Source: Epithemia pelagica
Taxonomy: Eukaryota; Protista; Bacillariophyta
Reading direction: 5' to 3'
DNA length: 64,000 nucleotides
NCBI GenBank assembly: GCA_946965045.2
Contig: OX337233.1
Span: 3,534,001-3,598,000 of the forward strand
Position numbers and translations under genes: made by a program. Under the pieces are notes generated by a model. The model saw only the letters and a program-made list of their open reading frames with translations. It was not told the DNA's origin and searched no databases. Below, piece by piece: positions 1 through 58,639 of this stretch (positions are counted from its first letter, which is position 1; the number at the start of each line of letters is the position of its first letter).

Positions 1-1
1 T

Positions 2-601
2 AGATTATTCCAGTCAGGGGTTATATCTGCTCCAGCAACCGTGGAAGTTGCCAAAATGTTTGGAATGAACGCGTTCTCAAGTCTGTTCTCAGAGAGTGGC
101 CGGTTTTATCAATGTGCAGAACGCATCGTAAACGCGGCAGACTATTTCATTCAACGACACGATGGTCGCATACCATCTAACATTTCCTTGCAAGAACTTC
201 TTACTCTCCCTGAAGTAGGATATAAAACGGCCGCAATCACCCTCGCGTACTCTTTTGGACGGGTTGAAGCAATCCCATCCGATGTGCATGTCATCAGATG
301 CTGCCAATTACTTGGCTGGATCCCCAAATCCTGTAACGATGGAATGCTCTGTTCCCTATTCTTGGAATCTTGGTTAGTCAACGAAGTATGGGGCGAGATT
401 AATCCTCTTTTCGGTGCCATTGGGCAAATTTTCAATGTGCCTGCATTGAAATTAGAGAGTTGCAGGATTCTGTCAGAGTATTCATCCAACTTTGATGGGA
501 ACGACGTTGACTCAACAATATACAACACCGATGTTACACAGAAGCAAATGACCTACATGCATAATCAAGTCGTCACTATCATACGAGGCTATGGGAAGTG
601 A
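2..601 (+). CDS. Endonuclease III-like HhH-GPD DNA glycosylase/AP lyase, cargo of hAT element 1 (5'-truncated by window edge)
   Basis: Helix-hairpin-helix LLTLPEVGYKTAA with catalytic Lys and IPSDVH with catalytic Asp (cf. Nth LPGVGRKTA...VDTH). Frame is open back to nt 2 (RLFQSGVISAPATVEVAK), matching the paralog at 51297-53207. No C-terminal 4Fe-4S Cys motif. Confidence 0.85.
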   Translation, partial: RLFQSGVISAPATVEVAKMFGMNAFSSLFSESGRFYQCAERIVNAADYFIQRHDGRIPSNISLQELLTLPEVGYKTAAITLAYSFGRVEAIPSDVHVIRCCQLLGWIPKSCNDGMLCSLFLESWLVNEVWGEINPLFGAIGQIFNVPALKLESCRILSEYSSNFDGNDVDSTIYNTDVTQKQMTYMHNQVVTIIRGYGK

Positions 602-752
602 CGATAAAAAGTTTCCTACTAATATTGTTTTTCTTACTTGCGACTACGTCTGTCCTAAATGGTTAGTATTCGATATTCTTCGATTTCTGTTTCTTGTTTT
701 CTGTTTTTTCAGTTGATGCTTCTCGTGTACTCTGTCATTATACATTCGGTCT

Positions 753-3700
753 TCAATCCTTGTTCAATCGAGGTGATCGACGTGGTGAGTCGACTACATC
801 ACCATTACCGTTTTGATCAGTACGAGCTGGAGTGGATTGCCCGACTGACTGGACTGACTGGGATATTGCCGTTGGAGCTGTCGTTGCGGCTGGAGCTGAA
901 GCTGGAACTGGAGCAGTCGATGCCCCAGTGTCAATAGACCGCCTTGCTTCTGTGGTTGAAGTTTGTGGAGGTGTTTTGCCTGTTGCAGTGTGTTCTGCCA
1001 TTACCTGTTCAGGGGGCGCCTTCTTTGCTCCAAACCGCAAAGCCAACGATTGCTGTTTCATTTTACGTTTCTTCTGTGAAGAAAGGCCGGTTCTTTTGGT
1101 TTTACTTGTACTTCCCTTTCGCTTTTGGGAACTGGTCTGTACCTTTTTGGAAACTGATGCTGATTGCGAATGGAACGAAGAACTTTCCGTAACCTTACTT
1201 GCGTTTGCCAAACTCTGCTCACCTGTGACTGATTGCTCTCCAGTGGCACAAAGTCGGAGACTTTGCTGCAGTGCTTGAAGTTTCTGAAGTTCCGTTTTCC
1301 GTTCTTCCACAACTTCGACCATTCTCTCGTCCGAATCCTCATTATCTTTCTCTCCTTCAATCTTTCTGTTCAATGCTTCCATCTGTTCCCTATCAGTTTT
1401 ATCCTGTACCAAGTCAATCAGTTCCACATCATCCCATTCTTCTACCTTTTCCTCGTTGTTATCGCCCAGTTTCTTGAATTTGTACGTTTGCCCGGACACT
1501 CCATTCTCTAAAGCACTTCCTTGAACGACAAATCCTTGTAGGTCCGTTGTTCCGTCTAAAATCTTCTCGAGCCGTCCTAGCTCACCTTGTGTTGATGAAT
1601 CACTCACTTCCACTATTTCACGGGCAGTATCCATTACTTCGATAGCACCTTCATGTGTAGAACCATCCTCCACTCCTGTCACAGCAGCAGCAGCAGCAGC
1701 AGCAGCTCTACGACCTTTTGGTTTGGCTTTGGAAGTGGTTTTGCGTAACTCTGGTTTCACTTTGTTGTTAGACATGTCCTTTTCTCTTTCGCTTATTGTT
1801 TTCCGGATTGGACGACTTAGACTCTCGATGGTTCTCAATTCAAAAACCTTGTTGCCTTGTCGATTCATTAGTGGATTCCTGTCGAACCAAGAGCTGGTAG
1901 AAAAAACTCTCTCTTGATACGCATTCGTTGCTGGTTTCGAAATCCATATGATTGCACTAGGAAAAATCTTGGGAAACTGTGTGCGATTGGCCATCCACCA
2001 CTGCATCACATTGAAGTATTGCGCCACGTCATGGAACTCTTCCTTGGCACAGGCGGTGAGAAACTCATCTTGCTCCTCATCTGTCCATGTCTGGGAACGA
2101 GCATCATACAGGGGTGTTGGAAATTGTTGGATAAGGTCTGCCCATGAGTGCGAAACTACAGTCTCACAAAAATTAAGATAGGCACCGAATTCATTGTCAC
2201 ATTGCTTGTAGAATTTTGCTCTTTCTGTCTGATCTCGTCCATTCCCCGCTGCTTGGCCAGTCATAGAAGTTAGTGTGGCATGTTCTCTTTCTCTAGTCCT
2301 TCGGTGTGCTTTGAAAATGTTGAATGCATCCATCACGTTAGCAACACTGTTTGTTGGTTGCGCTTGACTTGCGTCTCTTAAATCATCAGTACTGGCGTTG
2401 TCCTCCACATGAGGTGTTTCTTGAGTGCTTCCAGAGACAGAGGATGTTGACGATGTTGGAGATGTAAATTTTTGTACCACATCCATGACAAACTGGCGAC
2501 GAATCCTTTTGATGTCGTTGTCGTCATAAACTTCTATGTCCTCCTTCATTATAGATGGTCCAAGATAGCACAGAAACGGGTGACCAAGCATGGCATGTTC
2601 TGCATGAACATCATCCCCTTCCATCATGTAGGTCTTGTATTCGATCAAAATCCTATCAATCAGTTTCTTTGTTGATTCGAGTGCGTCATTATAGGGCAAC
2701 ATGGTCCGCTTCGATTGCAATGAGTGGATTGTTTCCGATGCATCCCAGGGTGTCACTCCTGGAGCATCTCTGTCCAGTACCAGAACCGGTATGCCCTTTT
2801 CTTTCATGATTTCAACACAAAACTTGCTGTTGTAAATTTCCAACAAGGATCCTGCCGAGGCAGAAGGATCATCCACTTGCAGTGACATGGCACATTTCTT
2901 CAACGGTAATAGAACACCTTCAAACTCTGCAAGGGCTTGCCATTCACTCTCTTTAGGGTACTTTGAGACAAAGTCCTTGTCTTTGTTTGTCTCAAAACTC
3001 TGTTGGTTTTTGTATGCATCCATGGTATGCTTGTCCCGAAAGAGGTCATGCGTCATAATGATGCATCCTGTTACTCTGGTTGTATTAGGCATTTGGATCT
3101 TGATTATGTGTCGGTGATTCTTTTGAGCATATTCTTTAAGACGCTGGAATCGCTTGGGGGACCGGGAACTCATAAGCCAGGATGAGAACTTGAAAAAGAT
3201 TTGATATATCTTCATAAAGGAAGGATTGCTGTCGATTACTTCCCCATGCCTCTTGCGTACTGCTAGACCGGTGGCGTGTTTGAGTATCAATTCCGCTCTG
3301 TGCATGTCGCACTTTCCACCACTGTTGTTTCCAATAATGTATTTGCCAGCAAGGACGGCGGAATTAGTGTTGTCGTTCACAGAACTGCACAAGTCAGTCT
3401 GTGTGAACGAAACATTCTTCAGGATTTTAGCCGTATGTTCCGCAACCTGGACAGCAGTATGCCCTTTGACATTAGCAAGACCAATGGGGATTTTATAGTT
3501 TTCACCGTTTCTTGGATCAGTGAAGACCAGGGTTATCCCCAAAATATCCTTGTTGTTGCCTTGCCATATGTCGTGACATATGGTGGCAAAGGCAATGGGC
3601 TTTCCGCATAACAAGGCATATGCGGCTCTAACCTTATTTCCCAACATGGTCACTGTTGCGACAAACTCATTGTATGATAGCAACCGCATTTTTGTTATTG

Positions 3701-4715
3701 CCTTGTTGCTGATTTCACAGTCCTTGGGAGAAAGTTTTGGGGCATTGGCTATTGCACATTGCAGTAGTTCTCGGAAAGAGTCTTTCTCCACAGTTCGAGC
3801 AGGGAATCCGTTGTCGTTCACAAACCTGTATATGGCTTGGTGAAGTAAGGACTTGGCATCCGAGCGAGATACCATTGTTCCAGAGTATTGCTTCATCGTT
3901 GATTGTGTAGGATCATTATTGGTATCATCATCTTTCAAACTTGCGCTGATGTGAGGGTGTTTAGCATCGTGGTGTTGCTTGATGTTGGAGGAAATGCCAT
4001 CACCCAGGCCAAGAAGACACTCGTCAAGGGATTTATTGGGGTTCTCAAAACATAGAGGGCAGACAACCATCCTCTTGTTAATGGTCTTATAAGTGTCGTT
4101 TTCACGTATGTCATCTTCGGAGGCCTGTTCTAACATGTCAAAACAGCGAAGGAGACCCTCCATTCTCAAAAGACTGTCCTCGGAAATCTTGCCTTTGTGT
4201 GTCGACAGCTTCTTGTAGTCAATGTATCGAACCGTGCCCCAAAAAGATCTGTAGAAATTACGAAATTGTTTTGATCTTGCAATAGATTGGAACGAAATGA
4301 ACGACTTTTCAAGTTTTATTTCTTCTCTTCGTTCGGGAGAAACAGATTCATCGTCTTCGTTATCGTTGTCGTTGTTTTCGTTGTTCATATTGAGATTCAC
4401 GTTGTCTGATGGATTGGTGTTGTTGTTAGTTGCACGGTTGTTGGGAACTGATGATTCCAAAGATGAAACAGAAGCTCGGCGAGATTGTCCTCTTGTGTTG
4501 GTAGGGGGCGGGGACATTGCAATGGTTGGAGGAGAAAGAGTTGAAACAGCCGGTGAATTATTGATACTCGTTATGACAAGCCCCAAGAGACCCTGAGACA
4601 TGTGGGTGAGAAGTGAGAAGGTCTCTGGAGTCTCGAATATGCAAAACAGTTGGTGAGTTGGGAGTGGGAAGCACCTCTTTTCTATACAGACTGGAAACTG
4701 GCAACTGATGGTCAC
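753..4715 (-). CDS. hAT-superfamily transposase (element 1)
   Basis: BED-like Zn finger (CPLC...HHDAKH), D1 CHDIWQ, D2 VNDNTN, CxxH (CDMH), TRVTG at the usual TRWNS position, C-terminal PATNAYQERVFS with catalytic Glu. True ATG probably 4601 or 4517. Confidence 0.9.
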   Translation of the reverse strand: MTISCQFPVCIEKRCFPLPTHQLFCIFETPETFSLLTHMSQGLLGLVITSINNSPAVSTLSPPTIAMSPPPTNTRGQSRRASVSSLESSVPNNRATNNNTNPSDNVNLNMNNENNDNDNEDDESVSPERREEIKLEKSFISFQSIARSKQFRNFYRSFWGTVRYIDYKKLSTHKGKISEDSLLRMEGLLRCFDMLEQASEDDIRENDTYKTINKRMVVCPLCFENPNKSLDECLLGLGDGISSNIKQHHDAKHPHISASLKDDDTNNDPTQSTMKQYSGTMVSRSDAKSLLHQAIYRFVNDNGFPARTVEKDSFRELLQCAIANAPKLSPKDCEISNKAITKMRLLSYNEFVATVTMLGNKVRAAYALLCGKPIAFATICHDIWQGNNKDILGITLVFTDPRNGENYKIPIGLANVKGHTAVQVAEHTAKILKNVSFTQTDLCSSVNDNTNSAVLAGKYIIGNNSGGKCDMHRAELILKHATGLAVRKRHGEVIDSNPSFMKIYQIFFKFSSWLMSSRSPKRFQRLKEYAQKNHRHIIKIQMPNTTRVTGCIIMTHDLFRDKHTMDAYKNQQSFETNKDKDFVSKYPKESEWQALAEFEGVLLPLKKCAMSLQVDDPSASAGSLLEIYNSKFCVEIMKEKGIPVLVLDRDAPGVTPWDASETIHSLQSKRTMLPYNDALESTKKLIDRILIEYKTYMMEGDDVHAEHAMLGHPFLCYLGPSIMKEDIEVYDDNDIKRIRRQFVMDVVQKFTSPTSSTSSVSGSTQETPHVEDNASTDDLRDASQAQPTNSVANVMDAFNIFKAHRRTREREHATLTSMTGQAAGNGRDQTERAKFYKQCDNEFGAYLNFCETVVSHSWADLIQQFPTPLYDARSQTWTDEEQDEFLTACAKEEFHDVAQYFNVMQWWMANRTQFPKIFPSAIIWISKPATNAYQERVFSTSSWFDRNPLMNRQGNKVFELRTIESLSRPIRKTISEREKDMSNNKVKPELRKTTSKAKPKGRRAAAAAAAAVTGVEDGSTHEGAIEVMDTAREIVEVSDSSTQGELGRLEKILDGTTDLQGFVVQGSALENGVSGQTYKFKKLGDNNEEKVEEWDDVELIDLVQDKTDREQMEALNRKIEGEKDNEDSDERMVEVVEERKTELQKLQALQQSLRLCATGEQSVTGEQSLANASKVTESSSFHSQSASVSKKVQTSSQKRKGSTSKTKRTGLSSQKKRKMKQQSLALRFGAKKAPPEQVMAEHTATGKTPPQTSTTEARRSIDTGASTAPVPASAPAATTAPTAISQSVQSVGQSTPARTDQNGNGDVVDSPRRSPRLNKD

Positions 4716-5179
4716 TGGTCACTGGTCACTTCATTCATGTCTTGAATGAGTGATGAGTGGCGAAACATGTCGAGAGGCGAGAGGAATATCAAGCAACATG
4801 TGGAACGAAAGAAGTGATCTTAGTGTGTGTTAGGAAGTAATTGACTGGAGTATATTGTAGGCTGGTAGGAGAGAACAAAGAAAATTGGAAATAGATTTGT
4901 ACAGAAAAGTTGGAACCGATGACTATGAGAATAGACTTTTGATAGTAAGTCAGAGGAGAATTGCGAGGAAATTGAATGCAACTTAGGGAAATTATGCTGA
5001 ATGTAAAGTTGCAATTTATCGACGAAAAGTCATAGAAATATTCGTTGCGAATGAATTATAGACACGAAGTTGGTAAAAAAAGGGGGGGAAATGAACTAAA
5101 AATGGTGAAAATGCAACTTTTTTGGTAAAAATATTTGGAAATTGGAAAATGGCCAAGTTCAACTTCCACACCCTGATCC

Positions 5180-6289
5180 TCAACACAAACTCTTGTCCAC
5201 AAGAGACAGTGTTTCACCCGGATATTCCTCAACAAATGCTCCGAGCGTTACAATGCCGGTTGGAACTGCAACCACGCTATAAAGTTGCTTATCCACCTTC
5301 ATTTCTGGTAGCTGCCATATAATGTTGCGTTGCGTGTCCAGCACCTCCCCAGCATGCGAGTACAGAATTTTATTATGTGTCCCTCCTACTACGACAAGGC
5401 AAGATCCCATGCGGACCACGACATGTGCACGTCGAGGACTGCCAAGAACAAGATCTTTGTGAATCGTCCACGATTTGGTAAACGGGAACGCTGATGTTGT
5501 ACTCTGAGGGGTCCCCGCTTTCCGCCAATCATCAAATTCAAGGTACTCGACAGACTTCAAGTCCGTGAAGAAAGAGCCAATATCATTTTCGTCCCTCTCA
5601 TCATTTTGCCCAAAACCACCAACAACATAAATACGTGAACCAACCACCGCCATTCCAAAGGCACTTCGAGCCACATTCATTGGTGGTCCAGATATGACAA
5701 AGCATTGGCTTTGGGAGCTTGTGTCAATAATATCGACTGATGAAAGAAGATAACCTCCACATTGTCCACCCGCCACAACAATGAATCTGTCATGTACGAC
5801 GACAGCGGCGCAAACACATCTGGGGCTTGACAAACGACATTCCAACGTCGTCCATTCGTGATTGTTTTGATTGCTTGCGAAAGACGAAAAAAACAAATCA
5901 GTAATATCAATTCTTTCAATGGTGGCCAAACCTGGCTCATTATTTTCTCCGCCAATGGCGTAAAGAGCTCCATTGCATACCACGGTAGCACAGAACGCGC
6001 GTGCTTCGTTCATAGCTCGTCCTTCTCGCCACACTTTCTTATGATCCTTAACATTCAACAGAAGAACGGAATTCAAGCGACAGTAATCATCATCCTGTCC
6101 TCCCAATACGACCACAATTTGTCCTTGGCTCTTGTCGGGGTGATCCACAACAACGAATGCGTGTCGTGTTCGCCCACCGTCTGGCAATGGAGGCCAATCA
6201 GATGGCCTCCATGTTGGATCCTCTTGAATGTTAGGAGAGTTCAAAAACGCCAGTCCGGATAACTGCGCTTGTTGGCGGAAGTTCGTCAT
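5180..6289 (-). CDS. Kelch-repeat beta-propeller protein, copy 1 (C-terminus shortened at hAT junction)
   Basis: Repeated kelch blades with GG doublets and Trp (VVVLGG...VWREG..MNEAR...LYAIGG...WTT; IVVAGG; IYVVGG). Ends SLVDKSLC* where paralogs continue. Confidence 0.85.
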   Translation of the reverse strand: MTNFRQQAQLSGLAFLNSPNIQEDPTWRPSDWPPLPDGGRTRHAFVVVDHPDKSQGQIVVVLGGQDDDYCRLNSVLLLNVKDHKKVWREGRAMNEARAFCATVVCNGALYAIGGENNEPGLATIERIDITDLFFSSFASNQNNHEWTTLECRLSSPRCVCAAVVVHDRFIVVAGGQCGGYLLSSVDIIDTSSQSQCFVISGPPMNVARSAFGMAVVGSRIYVVGGFGQNDERDENDIGSFFTDLKSVEYLEFDDWRKAGTPQSTTSAFPFTKSWTIHKDLVLGSPRRAHVVVRMGSCLVVVGGTHNKILYSHAGEVLDTQRNIIWQLPEMKVDKQLYSVVAVPTGIVTLGAFVEEYPGETLSLVDKSLC

Positions 6290-9199: not shown

Positions 9200-10342
9200 T
9201 CAACAGAGCTTTGGTCGGATGGGAGCCTTTCCCAGAGCCATCAATCCAGCAAAACACAAAGAGTTCTTGTCAGCAAGAGACAGTGTTTGACCCGGAATTA
9301 GATCTTCTCCGATCGTTACAATGCCAGATGAAATCGCAACCACGTTAGAACCTTGTATTGTCTTGTTCATGTTTGGCAGCTGCCATACACGGTTACGTAG
9401 CGTGTCTAGGACCTCCCCAGATCGATGGTCATAACCTTGATTATGCATCCCTCCTTCTACGACAAGGCAACATCCCACGCGGACCACAACATGTTGACTT
9501 CGAGGAGTACCAAGAACAAGATCTTTGTGAATCGTCCAGGAATTGGTGATTGACGACATGGATTTGGTATCTTTCTGTTTTTCTTTCAGCCAATCATCAA
9601 ACTCAAGGTACTCGACGGAATCAAACTTTGTATCATCTTCGCCATCCAAATAATCTAGCCCAGAACCACCGACAACATAAATACGTGAACCAATCACGGC
9701 CATTCCGAAAGAACTTCGAGCCACATTCATATGGGGTGCCCTTATGACAAAGCATTGGCTTTTGGAGCATGTGTCAATAATCTCAACTGATGAAAGAAAA
9801 TCATAATCTTCACCTTCTCCACCCGCCACAACAATGAATCTGTCATGTACAACGGCAGCGGCGCATCCTTTTCTGTCCCACGACAAACAGCATTCCAACG
9901 TCGTCCATTGCTGATTCTTTTGATTGCTCGCAAAAGATGAATAAACCAACTCTGTAATACCAATTCTTTCGATGGTGGGCAACGCTGACCATTCTTTCGA
10001 TCCGCCAATAGCGTAAAGAGATCCATTGCATACCACAGCTGCACACAAAGATCGTCCTTCGTTCATAGCGCACCCTTCTCGCCACACTTTCTTATGCTCG
10101 TCCACGTTCAACAGAAGAACGGAATTCAAATCATGACCCTCATTGTTGTATCCTCCTAAAACGACGACAATTTCTCCTTGGTTCTTATCGGGATGTTTCA
10201 TCACAACCGATGCGTGTTCTAGTCGCCAACCTCCTGGCAACGGAGGCCATTCAGATGGGCGCCATTCTGGTTCCTTTTGAATGTTGGCACGGTTGGTAAA
10301 ATGCAGTCCGGACAACTTTGCTTGTTGGCGGATGTTCGTCAT
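9200..10342 (-). CDS. Kelch-repeat protein, copy 2
   Basis: Same kelch motifs; ATG at 10342 (MTNIRQQ) aligns with the copy 1 start; ends SLCFAGLMALGKAPIRPKLC. Confidence 0.85.
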   Translation of the reverse strand: MTNIRQQAKLSGLHFTNRANIQKEPEWRPSEWPPLPGGWRLEHASVVMKHPDKNQGEIVVVLGGYNNEGHDLNSVLLLNVDEHKKVWREGCAMNEGRSLCAAVVCNGSLYAIGGSKEWSALPTIERIGITELVYSSFASNQKNQQWTTLECCLSWDRKGCAAAVVHDRFIVVAGGEGEDYDFLSSVEIIDTCSKSQCFVIRAPHMNVARSSFGMAVIGSRIYVVGGSGLDYLDGEDDTKFDSVEYLEFDDWLKEKQKDTKSMSSITNSWTIHKDLVLGTPRSQHVVVRVGCCLVVEGGMHNQGYDHRSGEVLDTLRNRVWQLPNMNKTIQGSNVVAISSGIVTIGEDLIPGQTLSLADKNSLCFAGLMALGKAPIRPKLC

Positions 10343-10692
10343 TGTCTGTCGCTTTGTTTTTCTCGGTGAGACACGTGAGAAAATAGATGTGCAGTTGCAG
10401 TGCATCAGAGTTTGAGACAATGGAGATGGTCGGTGCTCGGATGGCGCCATTCAGCCAAATGACATAAGCCCGATCCATTGGGGCGATTGTTTGATTGGAA
10501 ATGACTATCGCCGGGCGATTCATCTCTGTGAAAGACCACACAGATGAATCATGAAGGAATTCTGTCTCGAATTTGTCGGGTGGACTGTCAAGGGGAAAGA
10601 TACGAGTATAGCACCTATTCTCAGTTGCAAGAGAACGGCGAACCAAACGACTAAGAATACTCTATTCTACAACGTCCTAGGGATTACTATTC

Positions 10693-11385
10693 TTAACTGA
10701 GGACTGCTTGAAAAAGTGCCAATTCTTCTTGATTCAATTCTTCTTCAATCAGAAATCGTTTCGAGGCAATGTCGGAAGCCAACGATGAGACGGTTCGAGG
10801 TAATGACATGCGATGGTCCGGGGAGATCACCATCCACAAGCGGATCAGGACATATCCCTGGTTTGAAAGGAAGATCCCATGGCTTGGGCCAAGGCATGAG
10901 CTACTATAGTCGTCGTCGTTGTCGTCATTGTGGCCGTATGCGACAATCCGGAATCGCTGGTACGACTTGTGGCGGTTGGAACAAAGCGACAAAACTCGCG
11001 GGGGCACAACCCTTGCACGCACTGCGTCCGTTGAGGATCTTGCGCAATATAAAGGACAGGTTTTCCGGACGGTCGGCTACCAGGGGTGCCAATGGATCCA
11101 AGGAGTCGCGCCCTCAACTTGAGCGGTGGAGTACGTTATGGTCTCGTATACTTTGGCCTGAACTGTGTCGGTTTGAGTGGTGGTCGTTGCCATTGACGAA
11201 GAAGCAGCAGCTGCTACCGACAGCATTGGTGGTTCTCATCGGTGTCGGAGGTTGCCCGGGGTCCAAGACAACAACAGCGGACACCAGGCTTCCACGGAAT
11301 TCGACTCGTGTGGCATGGCTTGTGCTTGCACCAAGAGTTGACTACGAACGGTTTCATCTTACAACTCACTGGATGCTGAGGGTGA
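10693..11385 (-). pseudogene. Arrestin-like remnant, unit 2 (3' third only)
   Basis: Encodes the shared C-terminus (SDIASKRFLIEEELNQEELALFQAVLS); its 5' side abuts the 3' flank of kelch copy 3, so the arrestin 5' part is deleted. Confidence 0.8.
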
Positions 11386-11489
11386 GACGGCCGGTGCCAA
11401 CAGAGTCATTCCTTGGCCCTGTTCGCAAGGCCATTGGTCTTGTTTCCAAAAATCGAAACCACCAAGCGCAGCAAATCTTCTACCAACTA

Positions 11490-12644
11490 TCAACAGAGCT
11501 CTGGTCGGACAGGGGCCTTGCCCAGAGCCATTAATCCAGCAAAACACAACGAGTTCTTGTCTGTAAGACACAGTGTTTCACCCGAATCTTCATATTCATA
11601 AACACCAATCGTTACAATTCCACTTGAAACGGCAACCACGCCACAGCCATCCCTTCCGAGTCTAAGTGCTGGTAGATGCGATACAATGTTGCGATGCGTG
11701 TCCATGATCTCCACATAACGTGAGCACTTAACTGGATCGAGTGTCTCTACTCCTCCTACTACAACAAGGCACGGTCCCATTTTGACCACACCAGGGTTCA
11801 CTCGAGGAGTGTCAAGAATGAGATTCTTGTGAATCGTCCAGAAATTCTTTGATACCATAGCCATGGTAGATGTTTGACTTTTGGGTTCTTCTCCCATCCA
11901 GTCATGAAATTCAAGATACTCCACAGAATTAAGGTACTCTTTTCCCAACTGCCCGCCCAATACATAAATACGTTGACCAATCACAGCCATTCCAGGGCCA
12001 CTTCGACGAATATTCAACTTATTTCTGCAAAACATGACGCATTGACTTTCGGATGAGAGTGTGTCAAGAATATTGACTGATGAGAGTTCAATTCCATGGT
12101 ACCCGCCCGCCACAACAATGAATCTTTCGTGTACAGCGACCGCGGCTAAATAACATCGTTTGCTGGACAAACGACAATCCAACGTCGTCCATTTATTCTT
12201 TTCAATTCCCTCATATGATGACGGACAAAGCAAGTCCGAAACATCAATCTTTTCAATTGTATCCAACAGTTCTGCATTTTCGTTTTGTCCGCCAATGGCG
12301 TAAACAGCCCCATTGCATACCACAGCTGCATGATAAGCTCGTGCTTCGTTCATTGATGGCCCTGCTTGCCAGACCTTAGTATCATCGTCAACATTCAAAC
12401 GAAAAGTGGAATTTGTGCTATATCCATTATAGATCCAACACCATCTCTCGTATCCTCCCAATACAACCACAGTCTGTTCTTGAGTCTGGACGGGGTGATT
12501 GACAACAACTGATGCGAATCCATGGCGGTGTCGTCCCACCAATGGAGGCCATTCAGATGTCCGCCACTTTGGTTCTTCTTGACTGCTGGCATCGACGCTA
12601 ACAAAAGCCAGTTCGGATAACTGCGCTGGTTGGTGGACGTTCAT
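11490..12644 (-). CDS. Kelch-repeat protein, copy 3 (most divergent)
   Basis: Kelch motifs (VVVLGG, VYAIGG, IVVAGG, IYVLGG, LVVVGG); probable ATG 12644 (MNVHQP). Confidence 0.85.
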   Translation of the reverse strand: MNVHQPAQLSELAFVSVDASSQEEPKWRTSEWPPLVGRHRHGFASVVVNHPVQTQEQTVVVLGGYERWCWIYNGYSTNSTFRLNVDDDTKVWQAGPSMNEARAYHAAVVCNGAVYAIGGQNENAELLDTIEKIDVSDLLCPSSYEGIEKNKWTTLDCRLSSKRCYLAAVAVHERFIVVAGGYHGIELSSVNILDTLSSESQCVMFCRNKLNIRRSGPGMAVIGQRIYVLGGQLGKEYLNSVEYLEFHDWMGEEPKSQTSTMAMVSKNFWTIHKNLILDTPRVNPGVVKMGPCLVVVGGVETLDPVKCSRYVEIMDTHRNIVSHLPALRLGRDGCGVVAVSSGIVTIGVYEYEDSGETLCLTDKNSLCFAGLMALGKAPVRPELC

Positions 12645-50854: not shown

Positions 50855-51296
50855 CAGGGTTGTGAAGTACCTTAACGACATATATGAATACAATTAGTGT
50901 AATATATCCTGCGACCAAAAATAGTAGGATAAATTAATATGATATAATTCATATCTATCTACCTTTATGAATTTCATTTTTTCAAATATTCATTGCCTAT
51001 AAAACCATTGAACTTCATTTCGGTTATATATTCATTTCTGAAAATCTAACGGAATTAATTTCTCTCATTAATTACTTCCTATAATTATGTCTTATTTCAC
51101 TTTACTTAATTAAATGATGTGAATTAATTCTGCTCATTTTAGTAATTATATTCATTCCATTGTGTTTCACACACAATATCGCTATGGCTACGTGACTCGT
51201 GACCGATCCAGTCATGTTACAGGACTGTAGGAGAGAACAGTACTTCCGAGGTGCTGCTTTTGCATCAACGCCTCACTTGTTGAACACCATGGCACC

Positions 51297-53207
51297 ATGG
51301 CACTTGCTTCCCGTCCAAATGTTATTTTCGAATCGAAATGCTTTCCCCAATACCTCATGCATTGCAACCCTTCTTTATATACCATATTGATTGAATTGAA
51401 AGGCACAATGGCCTCGCAAAATCCTTCTGTCTCCCAAACATTACATGCCATTCAACGAAAAACCATACACTGGCTCATCCGTGTTGGTGGTCAAATCGAA
51501 TGTCCTCAACATGATACTGCCACACACAAATGCTGTATTCCCACTCTCTCTTTCCAAGATAAGCTCGACTTGATTTCCAGTATCATCCATCATACTCTTT
51601 TCCGAGGAACCCCCATCGCCAAGGACCCTTCCTTTCCTACTCAACACTATTGCATTGTGGATCAGCCCACTGCTTGCACGACCATCATTCTATCTCTTCG
51701 GTGCAATACACAATTTACAATTGTTGAAAACAATGCAATGACTGACTGTCTTCATTTCATAGAACACCAGCGCACGGTTTGTCCTACCACTTCTATCCGT
51801 TCTCTTGTCACATCTTGGATGATCAGGAAGATGCCCCTTATTTGTGTCCGTCAAAGACCACAAGAAATGGATGGGTTCAATGTCCTTGATTTACCCATTT
51901 CTCCAAGAGATGAATGTTCACCTCAAACCGAGTTCTACATCCCCTCGACTGCAGCTCCTTTCCTTTCCTTGCTCGAGGATCATGCGAGCGCCACCACCTC
52001 TTGTGTCGCATCAGAAGAGGAAATAGAAATTGTTCATCCCAACCCTACACCAAATTGTCATGCAACAGGAATAACAAGTTATCAATCACCTCTTCGATCT
52101 CCAACTCCTCCGCAACAACCAACCCACAGTCTTCAATCTTCATACGAGACTCCCCAACGGCCACAGGATCTGACCCACTCCGTATCAACTATGGCTGATG
52201 TTGCTACTCATTCACCCAAAAAGCAAAGAACCTTGAATCAAAACCTGTTTCCGGCTCATCGGTATTCAACTAGAGGTCAGAATGGTAAGATCACTGAATA
52301 CCTTCTGTCCATGTCACGGTCGAAGAAAACAATTCAGTATGTTGATGGCCAGACACAGAGACACATGCCCGGAGAAAAACCACTCCTCAAACAACACACA
52401 GAGACTCATGTACCACTTCCTGATTACGACAAACATCCAGAACTCAAACTGGAGCGGATTCTACAATTTTATTCCCTTCTAAACTTTTGGGAACCCTTGA
52501 AGAAGGACGGAATCGATGTTCCTCGCGATTCCTGGGAGGATTGGGTGGATTCATCTATTTCCCTAGATGACCCACAGGCCGACAGAGCTTTCATGTTCCT
52601 GATGACAATCTGCATGAGCTCCAGTACCTCAGATGCTCAGCTCAGCACCATCATGCCGCGCGTGTTTTCATTTGGATTAACTTCTGCCACTGCCGTATCG
52701 GATATTGCTCAAAAATTTGGAATGAATGCTTTCTGTTCCATCCTCTCTGAAGCAGGCCTTTTCTACAAAAACACTGAATGCATTCTCAATGCCGCTGATT
52801 ACTTTATACAACAATATAATGGCACGGTTCCCCCCAACATATCCATCGAAGAGCTCTCTACTTTGTATGGGATTGGGTATAAAACGGCTGCGATAGTGGT
52901 TGAAGCCTCTTTTGGTCGAACCGACGGAATTCCTTCGGACATCCATGTGATGCGATGGAGCAAGTATTTGGGCTGGACTGCAAGTACATCGAATGGCTAT
53001 CATTGCTCTAAAGAATTGGAATCCTGGGTTCCCCGACATTTCTGGAATAGAGTCAATCCACTGCTTGGGTCACTCAGCCAAATGGCTGTGTCTTCTGAAG
53101 CACCCAAAGTTCGAGAGCTCCTTGTAGAGTACAAGCATATGTGCCCTGACTTCAAAGCCAAGGTATTGAGTCAATTCGACAGATATACTAAGAAGAGAAA
53201 GTTGTAG
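51297..53207 (+). CDS. Endonuclease III-like HhH-GPD DNA glycosylase/AP lyase with ~400-aa unassigned N-terminal region; hAT cargo
   Basis: FLMTICMSSSTSD (cf. Nth LIAVILSAQATD), ELSTLYGIGYKTAA (HhH + Lys), GIPSDIHVMR (Asp), LESWVP..W..VNPLLG; no 4Fe-4S motif. Confidence 0.88.
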   Translation: MALASRPNVIFESKCFPQYLMHCNPSLYTILIELKGTMASQNPSVSQTLHAIQRKTIHWLIRVGGQIECPQHDTATHKCCIPTLSFQDKLDLISSIIHHTLFRGTPIAKDPSFPTQHYCIVDQPTACTTIILSLRCNTQFTIVENNAMTDCLHFIEHQRTVCPTTSIRSLVTSWMIRKMPLICVRQRPQEMDGFNVLDLPISPRDECSPQTEFYIPSTAAPFLSLLEDHASATTSCVASEEEIEIVHPNPTPNCHATGITSYQSPLRSPTPPQQPTHSLQSSYETPQRPQDLTHSVSTMADVATHSPKKQRTLNQNLFPAHRYSTRGQNGKITEYLLSMSRSKKTIQYVDGQTQRHMPGEKPLLKQHTETHVPLPDYDKHPELKLERILQFYSLLNFWEPLKKDGIDVPRDSWEDWVDSSISLDDPQADRAFMFLMTICMSSSTSDAQLSTIMPRVFSFGLTSATAVSDIAQKFGMNAFCSILSEAGLFYKNTECILNAADYFIQQYNGTVPPNISIEELSTLYGIGYKTAAIVVEASFGRTDGIPSDIHVMRWSKYLGWTASTSNGYHCSKELESWVPRHFWNRVNPLLGSLSQMAVSSEAPKVRELLVEYKHMCPDFKAKVLSQFDRYTKKRKL

Positions 53208-53322
53208 TAGTTTTCCTTCTACTTTTTTAATGTAACTTCAATCCACGTAATACTAATTCTTGTTAATCTCTCTTTGTTCTTGTTAATCTCTCCCGTCGTC
53301 ATTACATCATCACCTTGGAGTC

Positions 53323-56300
53323 TTAATCTTCATGATGATCATTATCTTCATGATCATTCTCTTCTTCCGCATCTGAATCGGACTCTAACTCTTTCAAGAC
53401 ATCGACAATTTTGTCGTATTCGGACTTATCATTCACACCCTCATCTTCATCGTCCTCTGCATCATATTCCCGATCATCCTTCGGTGCACCCTTTCTCTGT
53501 TTGACAAGTGTCCTAATGTCCCCTTGACGCCGACCACCTTTGTCTTGTTGTTTCTCATCTATCTTTGGAGCGCACGGAGAACCCACCTGCAGTTTGTCAT
53601 GTCTCTTAGTTTTGGCTTTGCGAGGAGGAGACCTACGAGTTGGCAGGAGCTTTTGTTGTTTTGTTTTCTTACGAGAAGATCCAGTTCCACTGCCACTGCC
53701 CTTACGCTTGACCCCAGTGGTGTCTTCTGCAATAGTGAGATTAATCGTGTCCTGCACTACCGCATCCTCCAGTCCTTTCAACTCATCATCAAATACCTTG
53801 TTCATGGCGGCGTCGCTATCTTCGTCATCATCGTTGTCACTCTCGTCCGCAGATGAGTGTGGTGCTGAATCGTCATCTGGATGTCTGTCAAACCGCACTA
53901 CTTTCACAGTGTCCCATTCAATGGGTTTCTTTTTTCCTTCTTGGACCAACTTTGAAAGCCGTTGTGCATGTTGAACTCTTTTCTTTTTCGCCATTTCAGC
54001 CCGGGCTTCTGGTGTTTCCAAACTTCCAATAACCTGCTGCAAGTCATCTTCATCGCTATCGTCACTGAGGTCTTCAAAATATTGGAAGTGTACTGACGCA
54101 TCATTAGTGACACGATCCTTTTCGGCGTCTGCCTTCTTATTGTAGGCAATAAAGCCCTGAGTTGCATCTCTCATGCCACTCATTTGCACCAGGGCCATTT
54201 GTTCTGTTGAGACTTTTTCCTTGACAGGTGGCGTCTTGGTATTTACTGTCCTCCCTTGTTCTGAACCCTCTTGTGCAGTACCGGCTTCTTCCGAGATGCC
54301 GACTCCGACATAATGGCTTTGAGGTTTGTCGGAGGCCATCTGAAGCTCCATCTCCCTCTTAACAATCTCTCGTTTAATAGACCGCGTAAGACAATCAATG
54401 CTTCTCATTTCAAAATGTTTTTTGAGCAGGTTAGCCATCAGCTTGTTCTGTTGGAACCACGTTCCCAAAGAAAAAATACGCTCTTGAAACGCATTAGTAG
54501 ATGGTTTGGTCAACCAAATCATGGCCATGACGTACATCATAGGAAATTCTTTCTTGTGTGAATTCCACCAGGCCATGATATCGAAATATTTGCCAATCTG
54601 GCAATAGTTGCCGTTCCGACACGCTTTATGAAAGAAGGACTTTTGTTCATCGTTCCAATCTGGTTCCTCATTCTTGTACAGCTCAGTAGGATATTGGGCG
54701 ATTACTTCGGCCCACTTTTTATCCACGTGAACACCACACATTCTTTTGAAAGCGTCAATCGACTCTTGACACGCGTTTTTCAAAGCTAATAAGACTTCAG
54801 TCTCTGAACCAGCCAGGGATGCAGCACCAGAGATCTGCAGAAGGGCCTGTTCCTTCAGTTCTCTGGTGCGACGCATCGATTCGAAGATGTCTTCTTCTTG
54901 ATAGCGTTCTTTTTTCTTGGATCCGGCTTTGGATCCTGCTTTGGATGCAATTGGAGGAGTCATTGGGTTGTCGGTTTGTTCGTCGGAGTCTTTGTCGGAT
55001 GGTTTTTGTTGCTTGTGGATAAGAGCACCAATAGGACTAGCCGTCCCACTGCTAAACTTTTTCATCATGTCGTCCAAGAAAACTTGGCGGGCTTTGCGTA
55101 CCTTCTCCGAGTCGAACGCAGCAAGAAATTGGAAGGTATCTTCGTAAATATTTGCCAACATAGGGTTGCAGCAGACTGCCTTCAAAGCATCTTCGTCCGT
55201 ATCAAGAAGATACATACGGTACTCATGAAGAATGCGGCGAATGAGTTTCCTGGGTCCATCACCCAGCTCATGATACGCCACTCCGACGCGCAATGAGTTT
55301 AGTTCACTAATGGTTGCAGAAGCATCCCATTTCTCGTCTTCTTCCAGATCAACTTCGTTCACCGGAATGCAGGCCACTTTGCTCATCCTCATGCGTTCTG
55401 TTTGGAAGTGCGAAAGGTAGATTTCCAACAGCGTTGCCGAACTAGCGCCTGGGTCGTCAGATTGCAACGAGAGTCCAACTGCCTTCAATGGGCTCAAGAT
55501 GCCTTCGTATTGTGCTAGAAGTTCCCATTCATCTTCAGTTGGATAAAGCCGAACAAAAGTTGGGTCACTTGCTTTCGAAGTGAGGACATACAAGTCGAAG
55601 AACCATTTGTTGCGCAGAAAGGCTTGAATCAGAATGATGCAGCCCATAACGCGAGTGTCGTTAGGAATGGGTAGTAAGATCAGATGGTATCCCAGTTCTT
55701 CTGCCTTTTTCTTAAGCTTTTCCCAACGATGAAAGGCATGCTTGCTTGTCACCCAACCACCCAGTTTTTTGAATTTTCCATATAGGTCGCAAAAGTCAGG
55801 GAAAGAGTCAATGAGAACTCCTTTCCTATACCTTTCTACGAGTCCTGTAGCATGCTTGAGGACCAACTCGGCCCTATGCATATCACACCGACCTGCCTTG
55901 GAATGATCACCCACAATGTACTTGCCCGCCAGTACCGCGGCCGACGTATTGTCGTTAACCGAAGCAATTAGGTCGTCTTGGTTGAAACCAACAGACAGCA
56001 AGAGTGAGTGTGTCAGGTTGGCTACATCAGCGGCCGAATGCCCTTTGGTTTCGGCCAAACCAATAGGGATTCGGTAGACGACACTGTTTCTTGGGTCACT
56101 GAACATTAATGTGACTCCTAATACGTCATGCCGTCTTGCCTGCCAAATGTCATGGCAAACCGTCGCGAAGGGTATTTCCTGACCGCATAGAGTCTTGTAT
56201 TCTTCGCGAACATTTCTAGCAAGTGCAGCAACGGTCGACACGTAGTCCTTATAGGAATCGACACGCAACTTTGTCACTTGTCGCCTGCTCATCGCTTCGG

Positions 56301-57129
56301 CCCGGGTGTCTTTAAGCTGTCCCCCATTGTTGAATGCATATCGGAGCAATTCGCGAAATTGGGGCTTTTCGACGGTGCTCGCAGGCAAACAACAATCATT
56401 AACGAATTCGTAGATAAGTTGTTGCAATTGACCAATGGCTTTCTTTCGGGGAGAAACTTCTGCCGTGAAACCTTCAAGTGTTGTTTGGTTCAATTTGTCT
56501 TCGATCACAACTCCAAATACTTTTTCATCGCCACCATGATGTGTATCTGTGTGCTGTTTCACATTGGAAGGCTTGTTATCGCTGCAACTAATGCAACATT
56601 TCGCCAAAGGGATGTCCGGGTTTTTGAAACAAAGTGGACAAATTACCATTCGATGAGAAAGTGGCTTGTACTTGTCCTTGTATTCCTTGTTAGAAAGTTC
56701 TCCTTCAGGATCAACTGGTAGAGGATTTCCATCATTATCATATTCGGCTTCTTGTTGTGGGGGTACTCCAAGGTAATCCTCCATGAGGTCGTGGAGCTTC
56801 ACAAACCCTTTGAAGGTAGCGGGAAGATCTCTGACTGTGCCGTCCCAAAGCCATTTGAAAAATGCCTGCCAATCAACATGGAGAACCCAATCCCAACGTT
56901 TTGAAGGACTGTTCGAAAATAGAAGTTTGGGTTTCCCTTGATGAAGAGGGATGAGCTCTTTTTCGGCAAGGATGCGTTCTTGTTTTGCTCGGACTTGATC
57001 TTCTATCTCTTCTTGGACGACTTTGTTACGGGCAGCAACCGCAGACGCCTTCATCTTGGGAGGAGGAGGCTTCTTTTTCGAAGGCTTTTTGGAGGTAGGC
57101 GACATGGAAGTTGTTGTTGTCAAGATCAA
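53323..57129 (-). CDS. hAT-superfamily transposase (element 2)
   Basis: CPLC...HTDTHH Zn finger, CHDIWQ, VNDNTS, CDMH, TRVMG, PSTNAFQERIFS; acidic/basic tail; probable ATG 57105. Confidence 0.92.
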   Translation of the reverse strand: MILTTTTSMSPTSKKPSKKKPPPPKMKASAVAARNKVVQEEIEDQVRAKQERILAEKELIPLHQGKPKLLFSNSPSKRWDWVLHVDWQAFFKWLWDGTVRDLPATFKGFVKLHDLMEDYLGVPPQQEAEYDNDGNPLPVDPEGELSNKEYKDKYKPLSHRMVICPLCFKNPDIPLAKCCISCSDNKPSNVKQHTDTHHGGDEKVFGVVIEDKLNQTTLEGFTAEVSPRKKAIGQLQQLIYEFVNDCCLPASTVEKPQFRELLRYAFNNGGQLKDTRAEAMSRRQVTKLRVDSYKDYVSTVAALARNVREEYKTLCGQEIPFATVCHDIWQARRHDVLGVTLMFSDPRNSVVYRIPIGLAETKGHSAADVANLTHSLLLSVGFNQDDLIASVNDNTSAAVLAGKYIVGDHSKAGRCDMHRAELVLKHATGLVERYRKGVLIDSFPDFCDLYGKFKKLGGWVTSKHAFHRWEKLKKKAEELGYHLILLPIPNDTRVMGCIILIQAFLRNKWFFDLYVLTSKASDPTFVRLYPTEDEWELLAQYEGILSPLKAVGLSLQSDDPGASSATLLEIYLSHFQTERMRMSKVACIPVNEVDLEEDEKWDASATISELNSLRVGVAYHELGDGPRKLIRRILHEYRMYLLDTDEDALKAVCCNPMLANIYEDTFQFLAAFDSEKVRKARQVFLDDMMKKFSSGTASPIGALIHKQQKPSDKDSDEQTDNPMTPPIASKAGSKAGSKKKERYQEEDIFESMRRTRELKEQALLQISGAASLAGSETEVLLALKNACQESIDAFKRMCGVHVDKKWAEVIAQYPTELYKNEEPDWNDEQKSFFHKACRNGNYCQIGKYFDIMAWWNSHKKEFPMMYVMAMIWLTKPSTNAFQERIFSLGTWFQQNKLMANLLKKHFEMRSIDCLTRSIKREIVKREMELQMASDKPQSHYVGVGISEEAGTAQEGSEQGRTVNTKTPPVKEKVSTEQMALVQMSGMRDATQGFIAYNKKADAEKDRVTNDASVHFQYFEDLSDDSDEDDLQQVIGSLETPEARAEMAKKKRVQHAQRLSKLVQEGKKKPIEWDTVKVVRFDRHPDDDSAPHSSADESDNDDDEDSDAAMNKVFDDELKGLEDAVVQDTINLTIAEDTTGVKRKGSGSGTGSSRKKTKQQKLLPTRRSPPRKAKTKRHDKLQVGSPCAPKIDEKQQDKGGRRQGDIRTLVKQRKGAPKDDREYDAEDDEDEGVNDKSEYDKIVDVLKELESDSDAEEENDHEDNDHHED

Positions 57130-58639
57130 TTGGCGGTCAGAGGCAGCTTGTGGCTGGTGATGCTATGGATGGAAAGGAATGTGGCTGATTGTTGAACAAG
57201 ATAAAGGTACGATCTTTGGAGGTGCAGCGATCATGTGTTTCATTTCTCATCTGTTTGTTCTTGTGAAACAAATTGTCAGAGGGTCAGTGGGTATCTTGTC
57301 GTCAGTTACTGTGGAAAAACACTGTGATTGTTGCAATAGGACTATTAACTGACAAAGTGTCGGTAAATGATATAATATTCGTAGGATAAGGAGTGAATTG
57401 GGATAAGAACGGAGGCCAGACAATGATGAAGAATATCAGTAGGTAATATATTCCCGTGACGGGAATATGTAGAATTAATTTAAAAAATATATTCATGTGG
57501 AAAAATATGGGGAATTAATATGAAGAATATATTACGTGTATGGTGGTAAAGGGTAATTCATTTGAAGACAGAACTGATGGGTAATTAAATTACCAAAATG
57601 TATCAGATCATTTGAAATATGAATAAGTAACTTCACAACCCTGATCTCAGGGAGTGGTCTGACTAGGACAAACCGTTCGGATCACCACCGAATGGCGAGT
57701 CAATTCGCTGACGCCGTATAAGCGCAAATTTCCGAGTTTGTACGAGCTCCACCTCAACAAAATTGCAGCCGCAGTAGCCCGTGCTATCAAGGCCTCCACT
57801 GTTTTTTCTATAGTGATTCTAGCGTCGTAGGAAGACCACTACGGTCATTTTGCACTGCATAACACCACCATGGACAACAAGAACCGCTGTGCACCTCCAA
57901 CGAAAGGTGCTAGTACTCCTCCGACCATCCAGGATGCCTCAGAATCAAGTGTACCGTGATGGGTGAAAAGGGCGGCATTGAGTTGGCGAGTTTGATGGAC
58001 CTACGGCAAGGTTGTTTGAAGTCTTCCATTTTGGTGTCGGAAGCTCGCGACGAGAAGATCGACTATGGAGATGGATACCGATGGAATGAGCAAAGATTGC
58101 GGGGAGGGAAGTCACCTGAAGCTTTGAAATGGATGGATGAGGCATTGGAGAGCAGCAGCAAGGACACATGGCAATCAACTGGAGGATTCCGAAGCACAAA
58201 CATGACGAGAATCTCTGCAACCACAACGAAGCAAGTGACGATGAAAAGACGACGCCACTGGAGACAATGAATGCAGCAATTCACTTATCGTCCGTCCGCA
58301 TGCAACAATCAACTTCTTGTCTTTGTGTGGTCCGAACACAGCAAATGAAAGCCTCGTCGGGTTGGTTCAAACGCAACAAGCAAGAAAAGTTTGGTTCGAA
58401 CAAACGAGAAAACAAACTCAACCATGGGTGGACAAACTGCTTCTGTCGCAGCCGACAATGGTGCTGCTGCTGCTGCTGATTGTTCGTGTGGAAGAAGGAG
58501 GGGATGCCGTGGAGCTGCGGCAGCGGCAGTCGAAGATGGTGTGGTCGTCCTCCTTCTTCCACCTTGCGACGAAACAATCAACTCCCTGTCTTTTCGTTAC
58601 CCTCACCCAACAAATCGAAGCCTCGTCCAATGGTGAACG

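What the first reader, a model, noticed from the sequence alone, without database searches (positions are those of the whole stretch)
1..5175. A second, diverged hAT element with the same glycosylase + transposase layout
Seen: an Nth-like ORF (+) converges on a hAT transposase (-) with a 151-bp gap, the same layout as element 2 (115-bp gap), and ends in a related TIR. Both protein pairs are clearly diverged, yet the catalytic Lys/Asp and the DDE residues are kept. Inference: the glycosylase is a long-standing, selected part of this transposon family, not a one-off captured host gene.
Basis: partly seen in the sequence, partly recalled or inferred. Interest (0 to 1): 0.85.

Follow-up and report, generated by a model that had tools for sequence, protein, structure and literature searches.

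The report
Second glycosylase-carrying hAT transposon lineage
Window 1-5175 is the right three quarters of an intact, recently mobile cut-and-paste (hAT) jumping gene that carries its own DNA base-excision enzyme gene beside its transposase. Comparison with a very diverged second element in the same window and with ten more copies shows that the two genes have been inherited together for a long time.

Summary

**Anatomy.** The tail of an endonuclease III/NTH1-like ORF (2-601, +) converges on a 1282-aa hAT transposase (753-4601, -) across 151 bp. The element ends in the TIR CAGGGTGTGGAAGTT (5161-5175).

**Left end.** I fetched the window's own contig. The predicted left end is there, with the same 15-nt TIR and a perfect 8-bp duplication (ATCCTCAA). 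The element is 6,926 bp and starts 1,751 bp before the window.

**Recent mobility.** A second copy, 99.7% identical, lies elsewhere with a different duplication, nested inside another hAT of the same family.

**Family.**
- Nine genomic copies have TIRs and perfect 8-bp duplications that enclose both genes.
- Four metagenomic contigs show the same gene pair.
- The glycosylase and transposase trees share every strongly supported clade (Mantel r 0.69; AU test finds no conflict).
- dN/dS is 0.13-0.20 where it can be measured.
- The catalytic Lys and Asp and the transposase D, D, E are invariant.

**Differences from Nth.** The enzyme lacks the Fe-S cluster cysteines. It has a duplicated N-terminal module with no fold match.

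**Function.** Untested. Anti-silencing base excision is my best guess, at about 0.4.

**Prior reports.** This scan has reported the same family at least nine times on other DNA of this genome. I found no published description.

The parts
2..601 (+). C-terminal 199 codons plus stop of the 605-aa glycosylase gene. The gene starts 1,217 bp before window position 1, at L002 17506. This part holds the HhH motif, the catalytic Lys481 (224-226) and Asp500 (281-283), and no Cys4 cluster.
602..752 (.). 151-bp spacer between the two convergent stop codons
753..4601 (-). hAT transposase, 1282 aa. It has a BED-type C2H2 finger (C181, C184, H210, H215), D344 (3570-3572), D410 (3372-3374), CxxH (C431/H434), TRV in place of TRW (508-510), E897 (1911-1913) and the hAT dimerisation domain.
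4977..5119 (.). Subterminal repeats. The 8-mer TGCAACTT occurs at 4977-4984 (+), 5006-5013 (-) and 5112-5119 (+), with three more copies near the other end of the element. There are none in the 6-kb interior. These are candidate transposase-binding sites.
   Evidence: (7 matches in 21 kb, 0.96 expected; 6 of them within 370 bp of the element ends)
5161..5175 (-). Right terminal inverted repeat, CAGGGTGTGGAAGTT. The same 15 nt form the left end at L002 18026-18040.
   Evidence: Contigs of public DNA runs break exactly at 5175 and continue into other flanks.
5176..5183 (.). 8-bp target-site duplication, ATCCTCAA. The other copy lies directly outside the left TIR at L002 18041-18048. It contains the stop codon of the neighbouring Kelch gene.
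50855..57643 (.). Element 2, the comparison element: a complete 6,789-bp hAT with a 20-nt TIR (18/20) and the duplication ATCTCAGG. Its glycosylase is at 51297-53207 (+) and its transposase at 53323-57129 (-).

Best explanation
**What it is (shown).** Window 1-5175 is the right 5,175 bp of a 6,926-bp autonomous hAT DNA transposon. It moves by DDE-transposase cut-and-paste and makes 8-bp target duplications. It has moved recently: at least two copies are 99.7% identical and sit at different sites.

**The family (shown).** The element belongs to an old clade of hAT elements, deeply split within this one genome and also present in environmental samples. Every member I examined carries a second, convergent gene.

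**The second gene's product.** It has four parts:
- a duplicated alpha/beta N-terminal module of unknown fold;
- a disordered linker;
- a conserved basic motif (TR...SRSK..I.Y...RH.PG.PPKLK);
- an endonuclease III/NTH1-derived HhH-GPD domain that keeps the Schiff-base Lys and the catalytic Asp but has lost the Fe-S cluster loop.

**Status of the gene (shown).** It is an integral part of the transposon under purifying selection, not a chance neighbour or a one-off capture.

**What it does (inferred, about 0.4).** The enzyme is a bifunctional glycosylase/AP lyase. It excises a modified base from the element's own DNA (5-methylcytosine or one of its deamination or oxidation products) and so counters CpG-methylation silencing or decay. 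This would parallel the TET/JBP genes carried by fungal DNA transposons.
For: **Structure of the element**
- The TIRs and a perfect duplication were found on the window's own contig.
- A second copy in L001 has a different duplication (ATTCTACT) and 18 differences in 6,926 bp.
- In public DNA runs the element's depth is about 2.6 times that of its flank, and contigs continue from 5175 into further, different flanks.
- Subterminal TGCAACTT repeats occur only near the two ends.

**Family**
- Nine TIR- and duplication-bounded genomic copies enclose both genes.
- The same pair is on contigs from sediment metagenomes and two Logan runs.
- 41 clusters at 50% identity score 200-358 bits on the catalytic-domain profile, against 103 bits or less for all other Nth-like proteins. 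None of the 41 has the C-x6-C-x2-C-x5-C motif.

**Co-inheritance**.

**Selection**
- dN/dS is 0.13-0.20 over the whole gene and 0.25-0.33 for the N-terminal part.
- The catalytic part has dN 0.20 with dS saturated.
- 38 columns are invariant, including K481 and D500.

**Fold**
- The AF2 model has mean pLDDT 82.
- The best PDB matches are human NTHL1 (TM 0.72 normalised by the target) and endonuclease III-DNA complexes.

**Context for an anti-methylation role**
- Between two 98.8%-identical copies, 20 of 49 transitions are in CpG context.
- CpG o/e of the elements is 0.73-0.87, against 0.93 for host DNA. The elements therefore appear to be CpG-methylated.
- DNA transposons with TET/JBP demethylation genes, including hAT, are documented in fungi (PMC12730594).
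Against: **On function**
- No biochemical, methylome or RNA evidence is available, and no RNA run holds the stretch.
- The domain is closest to NTH1/EndoIII, which act on oxidised pyrimidines, not to the plant DME/ROS1 5mC glycosylases. It lacks their Fe-S cluster and C-terminal domain.
- The CpG decay seen in the copies shows the enzyme does not fully protect them.

**On this copy**
- It has E477 where more than 90% of relatives have Gly (GVG to EVG in the HhH hairpin).
- It has C506 for a near-invariant Trp; the Cys is shared with its nearest relatives.
- Its own enzyme may therefore be weakened. Recent transposition needs only the transposase, so it does not argue against this.

**On sampling**
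- The relatives were found through a protein database, so decayed copies are under-sampled.
- Two metagenomic transposases are split into two ORFs, and one copy (L008) is interrupted by a Copia element.
Confidence: 0.85

Rival explanations
1. The glycosylase repairs, rather than demethylates. It removes deaminated or oxidised bases (T:G, U:G, 5hmU, thymine glycol) from the element, protecting it from mutational decay of methylated CpGs or from a host base-editing defence.
For: - Its closest solved relatives are NTH1/EndoIII, and the family includes T:G mismatch glycosylases such as 1kea.
- CpG transitions are the main decay route of these copies.
Against: - CpG-context transitions still accumulate (20 of 49).
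- Mismatch enzymes of this superfamily (MutY, Mig) usually lack the Lys nucleophile, which is invariant here (the statement about MutY/Mig is my own knowledge).
Confidence: 0.22
2. The enzyme takes part in transposition chemistry itself. It might flip or excise a base, or nick DNA by its AP-lyase activity, at the element ends or at the target or donor site. This could make up for the transposase's missing TRW tryptophan.
For: - All 24 aligned transposases have TRV (or another residue, but not W) where I expect the hAT TRW motif.
- The association of the two genes is strict in all pairs examined.
Against: - No hAT is known to need a glycosylase (my own knowledge).
- The equivalence of TRV with the Hermes W319 position was not confirmed by a computed alignment.
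- The TIR and the subterminal repeats contain no obvious modified-base site.
Confidence: 0.12
3. The protein has a non-catalytic role. It might serve as a DNA-binding or bending accessory factor, or as a regulator of the transposase, with the glycosylase fold reused as a scaffold.
For: - The N-terminal module and the linker motif are conserved (dN/dS 0.25-0.33).
- The helical half of the N-terminal module weakly resembles three-helix DNA-binding domains (Z 3-4).
- This copy tolerates G477E.
Against: - Lys481, Asp500 and most pocket-lining columns are invariant across 31 sequences at about 30% identity. That is hard to explain without catalysis.
Confidence: 0.1
4. The gene is a neutral passenger: a host NTH1 copy captured by chance that hitch-hikes, or simply the host's own gene lying next to a transposase.
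For: - Gene capture by DNA transposons is common (my own knowledge).
- dN/dS between the two 99.7% copies is about 0.9, but this rests on only 4 differing codons.
Against: - The gene lies inside the TIRs at nine sites.
- It has co-diverged with the transposase to about 30% identity with open frames kept.
- dN/dS is 0.13-0.20.
- The family is discrete and has no Fe-S cluster.
Confidence: 0.03

Closest known systems
hAT superfamily DNA transposons (Ac, hobo, Hermes)
   Same: - 8-bp target duplication and short TIRs that begin CAG.
- Subterminal short repeats.
- BED-type zinc finger; DxW and xDNxxN blocks; CxxH.
- C-terminal ERxFS and dimerisation domain (Pfam PF05699; aligned to Hermes).
   Different: - Carries a second, conserved gene.
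- The transposase is very long (about 1,250-1,350 aa), with a low-complexity C-terminal tail.
- It has Val where the TRW tryptophan is expected.
Endonuclease III / NTH1 (HhH-GPD bifunctional glycosylase/lyases)
   Same: - Fold: best PDB matches are 7rdt and 1orn.
- HhH motif with the catalytic Lys, and Asp 19 residues downstream.
- Sequence E-values of 1e-12 to 5e-16 to human NTHL1.
   Different: - No [4Fe-4S] cluster cysteines; two helices stand in their place.
- About 350 extra N-terminal residues with a duplicated module of unknown fold.
- Multi-copy and transposon-borne.
- Pfam HhH-GPD score is below its cut-off.
TET/JBP-encoding DNA transposons of fungi (PMC12730594), including hAT7 families
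   Same: DNA transposons, some of them hAT, that carry an enzyme gene acting on modified DNA bases. This is read there as a counter to methylation silencing.
   Different: - A different enzyme class (dioxygenase versus glycosylase) and a different host group.
- That paper infers frequent transfer of TET genes between transposon superfamilies. Here the cargo and the transposase co-diverge.
Plant DEMETER/ROS1 5-methylcytosine glycosylases
   Same: HhH-GPD domain with Lys and Asp. These are bifunctional base excision enzymes that oppose DNA methylation. They serve as a functional model only.
   Different: DME/ROS1 have an Fe-S cluster, a split glycosylase domain and a conserved C-terminal domain (my own knowledge). 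None of these is seen here, and no specific sequence affinity was found.

Membership tests
hAT superfamily transposon | 8-bp target-site duplication flanking short TIRs | tested here: met
   The duplication TTGAGGAT/ATCCTCAA stands on both sides of a 15-nt perfect TIR. The same holds for 8 further copies.
hAT superfamily transposon | hAT C-terminal dimerisation domain with the catalytic Glu (ERxFS) | tested here: met
   Pfam PF05699 scores 27.8 bits against a 21.4 cut-off. The profile aligns to Hermes 441-486, E 6e-07. E897 is invariant.
hAT superfamily transposon | Two catalytic Asp in the DxW and xDNxxN blocks, plus the CxxH motif | tested here: inconclusive
   HDIW (D344), NDNT (D410) and CDMH (C431/H434) are invariant in 24 sequences. 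Their equivalence to Hermes D180 and D248 rests on motif recognition, not on a computed alignment or a structure.
hAT superfamily transposon | Conserved Trp of the TRW(N)S motif (base-stacking residue in Hermes) | tested here: not met
   The family has PNxTRVxG. T508 and R509 are invariant, and V510 is present in at least 90%. The motif equivalence comes from my own knowledge.
Endonuclease III / Nth family | HhH-GPD fold | tested here: met
   Foldseek: 7rdt E 3e-06, TM 0.72 normalised by the target; 1orn E 3.5e-05.
Endonuclease III / Nth family | Catalytic Lys in the HhH motif and Asp about 18-20 residues downstream | tested here: met
   K481 and D500 align to the Lys and Asp columns of NTHL1 and are invariant in 31 sequences.
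Endonuclease III / Nth family | [4Fe-4S] cluster loop, C-x6-C-x2-C-x5-C | tested here: not met
   The motif is absent from all 41 family representatives and present in about half of the next-best Nth-like hits. The alignment shows no conserved Cys after FGQ.
Endonuclease III / Nth family | Pfam HhH-GPD (PF00730) above the gathering score | tested here: not met
   Element 2 scores 17.4 bits against a 26.2 cut-off. The 199-aa piece in the window gets no hit.
DEMETER/ROS1 5mC glycosylases | Fe-S cluster, a bipartite glycosylase domain and a DME-type C-terminal domain | tested here: not met
   There is no Cys4 motif. Pfam finds no further domain. The best sequence and fold matches are NTH1/EndoIII.
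DEMETER/ROS1 5mC glycosylases | Excision of 5-methylcytosine | not testable with these tools
   This needs an enzyme assay.

The most novel reading that the evidence does not exclude
Base excision is part of the transposition reaction in this hAT clade. The transposase has lost the base-stacking Trp. The element-encoded glycosylase/AP lyase would then supply base flipping or a strand break at the ends, the donor flank or the target. That would make this a two-enzyme DNA transposon with a new cleavage chemistry.
Probability: 0.07. Interest if true: 0.95.

Novelty: new variant of a known kind. Interest (0 to 1): 0.7.

Why it matters
No DNA glycosylase is reported as a transposon gene in the literature I could search.

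This finding adds the evolutionary argument. Two lineages only 32-36% identical share the same two-gene plan in one window, and a dozen pairs co-diverge. The enzyme is therefore kept by selection acting on the element.

If the enzyme removes methylcytosine or its derivatives:
- it would be a transposon-borne counter to DNA-methylation silencing in diatoms;
- it would be a second origin of demethylating glycosylases outside plants;
- it would be a compact, Fe-S-free EndoIII scaffold of possible use as a tool.

If instead it works in transposition, that would be new transposon chemistry.

Tried and rejected
- **Pfam.** Pfam on the 199-aa in-window piece gave nothing. PDB sequence search was needed to identify it.
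- **dN/dS between the two in-window copies.** It is not computable because dS is saturated. I used a closer pair instead.
- **RNA evidence.** No RNA run holds the stretch.
- **Read laying.**
  - It used Logan contigs only and could not show an empty site.
  - The loose end before 5188 does not match the element's other flank. It probably comes from a Kelch paralogue.
  - Neither element fits with both flanks into the 6,000-letter limit, so no excision joint could be sought.
- **Fold of the N-terminal module.**
  - Foldseek against the PDB gave no match at E 0.001 or better.
  - VIA-align against 48,161 chains gave a best Z of 4.1, on three-helix DNA-binding domains. That is within the noise described by the tool.
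  - The ESM Atlas gave TM 0.31 or less, and the Atlas feature search was blank.
  - I therefore call the fold unknown, not new.
- **Host NTH1 reading.** Rejected.
- **Not done.**
  - I did not identify the host's own NTH1.
- I did not determine the organism.
  - I built no tree against cellular Nth proteins, because the library gives no taxonomy.
Full report
**What is in the window**

- ORF 2-601 (+) runs off the window start. It ends 151 bp before the stop of a long ORF on the other strand, 753-4715, whose called start is the ATG at 4601 (1282 aa).
- The minus-strand protein is a hAT transposase.
  - Pfam's hAT dimerisation domain scores above its cut-off.
  - A profile of 24 relatives aligns its PATNAfQERvFS block to the Hermes transposase.
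  - Invariant columns include a C-x2-C...H-x4-H finger, HDIW, NDNT, C-x2-H and ERxFS.
- The plus-strand piece matches human NTHL1 (E 1e-12) and bacterial endonuclease III. Lys (codon 224-226) and Asp (281-283) stand in the catalytic columns.
- The element ends at 5175 with CAGGGTGTGGAAGTT (- strand), followed by ATCCTCAA.
- Element 2 (50855-57643) has the same gene layout with a 115-bp spacer, 20-nt TIRs (18/20) and a perfect 8-bp duplication, ATCTCAGG.
- The two glycosylases are 51% identical over the in-window part and 32% over 600 aa. The two transposases are 36% identical over 981 aa.

**The missing left end**

- The neighbouring Kelch protein led to the window's own contig, L002. Its coordinate x equals 16290 minus the window coordinate.
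- The same 15-nt TIR stands at L002 18026-18040, followed by TTGAGGAT, which is also found directly before the other TIR.
- The element is 6,926 bp and begins 1,751 bp before the window. The complete glycosylase gene (605 aa, L002 15689-17506) lies inside it.
- The 8-mer TGCAACTT occurs six times within 370 bp of the two ends and nowhere in the interior, as expected for hAT subterminal binding sites.
- The insertion sits 4 bp past the Kelch gene's stop codon, which lies inside the duplication.

**Recent activity**

- The transposase protein also led to L001 on another contig.
- L001 holds a second copy with 18 differences in 6,926 bp and a different duplication, ATTCTACT.
- That copy is nested 318 bp inside the end of another family member, which has TIR CAGGGTTGTGAAGTAC, duplication GTCATGAG and its own transposase and glycosylase genes.
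- In contigs of public DNA runs the element is about 2.6 times as deep as its flank.
- Those contigs stop at 5175 and go on into further, different flanks, so there are probably more than two copies.
- A different lineage (L012 and L013) also has two copies that differ by 3 bases, with different duplications.

**Is the glycosylase part of the transposon family?**

*Gene pairs collected:*
- I collected the gene pair from 12 further places besides the two in the window.
- Nine genomic copies have TIRs of the form CAGGGT..G.A.GT and perfect 8-bp duplications that enclose both genes.
- Four contigs from other samples (two sediment metagenomes and two Logan assemblies) show the same convergent pair.
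- One copy (L008) has a Copia element where the transposase should be.

*Co-divergence:*
- Apart from the near-identical copy pairs, the pairs are 28-46% identical.
- Maximum-likelihood trees of the two proteins share every starred clade: {A, A2, I}, {C, J}, {B, G, H} and {D, E, F, K}.
- Patristic distances correlate at r 0.69, reached by 22 of 20,000 permutations.
- Three bipartitions are shared, against a mean of 0.26 under label shuffling.
- One grouping is strongly supported only by the transposase. The glycosylase data do not reject it (AU p 0.42).

*Selection:*
- dN/dS between the two in-window copies cannot be computed, because dS is saturated.
- Element 2 against L013 gives 0.13-0.20 for the whole gene and 0.25-0.33 for the N-terminal part. 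The catalytic part has dN 0.20 with dS saturated.

*A discrete family:*
- An exhaustive profile search found 43 clusters at E 1e-30 or better.
- On a catalytic-domain profile the family scores 200-358 bits, and everything else scores 103 or less.
- None of the 41 family members has the Fe-S motif, whereas about half of the next hits do.

*Sampling bias:* relatives were found as called proteins, so decayed copies are under-represented.

**The protein**

- The AF2 model (pLDDT 82) shows four parts: a structured N-terminal region (1-218), a disordered linker (219-275), a conserved motif region, and a helical catalytic domain (332-604).
- The catalytic domain's best PDB matches are NTHL1 and endonuclease III-DNA complexes.
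- Folded alone, the N-terminal region (pLDDT 87, pTM 0.78) is two repeats of a beta-beta-alpha-alpha-beta-alpha unit, each with a conserved Trp (W59, W174).
- No library gave a convincing match for it.
- The window's copy deviates at two near-invariant positions, E477 for Gly in the HhH hairpin and C506 for Trp. Its own enzyme may therefore be weaker than its relatives'.

**How it may work**

*Shown:*
- a mobile hAT element;
- an integral cargo gene under purifying selection;
- intact Lys and Asp.

*Inferred:*
- The invariant Lys points to a bifunctional glycosylase/AP lyase.
- The elements seem to be CpG-methylated.
  - Between two 98.8% copies, 20 of 49 transitions are in CpG context, where I estimate roughly 9% would be expected from the share of CpG sites.
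  - CpG o/e is 0.73-0.87, against 0.93 in host DNA.
- My preferred reading, at about 0.4, is excision of 5mC or its derivatives from the element to oppose silencing. The concept parallels the TET/JBP genes of fungal DNA transposons (PMC12730594).
- The rivals are repair of deaminated or oxidised bases, a role in transposition chemistry, and a non-catalytic role.

**Novelty**

- Four literature searches found no transposon-borne DNA glycosylase.
- This scan has already reported the family on other DNA of the same genome, and element 2 in this window. Those notes agree with what I tested.
- This finding adds four things:
  - the confirmed left end;
  - the second deep lineage in one window;
  - the nested insertion;
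  - an explicit co-divergence test.

**Not established**

- The organism was not determined here.

Noticed in passing
L001 9109-23518 (contig ctg1356l): Nested transposons. A 99.7% copy of the finding's element (9427-16352, duplication ATTCTACT) is inserted 318 bp inside another glycosylase-carrying hAT. The outer element has TIR CAGGGTTGTGAAGTAC and duplication GTCATGAG, and a 98.8% twin in L010.
   Followed up: yes
window 5176-5183 and 5180-6289 (-): The element inserted 4 bp past the stop codon of a Kelch-repeat gene. The TGA lies inside the 8-bp duplication, so the coding sequence is untouched but its 3' UTR is replaced by transposon DNA. Two more Kelch paralogues lie nearby on the contig (L002 3646-4800 and 5948-7090).
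   Followed up: partly
window 3075-3083 (transposase residues 507-509 region; motif PNTTRVTG) and element 2 residue 492: Both transposases, and at least 90% of 24 relatives, have TRV where hAT transposases are expected to have TRW, the base-stacking Trp of Hermes. The equivalence to Hermes W319 was not confirmed by an alignment.
   Followed up: partly
L002 16847-17506 (-) = glycosylase residues 1-220; homologous part of element 2 at window 51297-52001: The N-terminal third of the glycosylase protein is a tandem duplication of a roughly 100-aa alpha/beta unit with a conserved W-x-x-R. The model is confident (pLDDT 87), but there is no convincing match in the PDB or the ESM Atlas.
   Followed up: yes
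L002 glycosylase residues 278-320 (outside the window); element 2 about window 52230-52380: A conserved basic motif lies between the linker and the catalytic domain: TR....S..L..SRSK..I.Y.....RH.PG.PPKLK. T278, R279 and Y301 are invariant. Its function is unknown; it could be a nuclear-import or DNA-contact element.
   Followed up: no
L008 9764-15451: A Ty1/Copia-type retrotransposon (RVT_2, 1895-aa ORF) occupies the place where the transposase of another family copy should be. The glycosylase ORF of that copy is still open.
   Followed up: no
L003 2293-6124 and L011 539-4526: In two metagenomic copies the transposase is called as two overlapping ORFs. This is either a frameshift or a short intron; it was not resolved.
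   Followed up: no
window 39797-43522 (+): An intronless 1241-aa myosin gene. It is ordinary host content and shows how gene-dense and intron-poor the region is.
   Followed up: no
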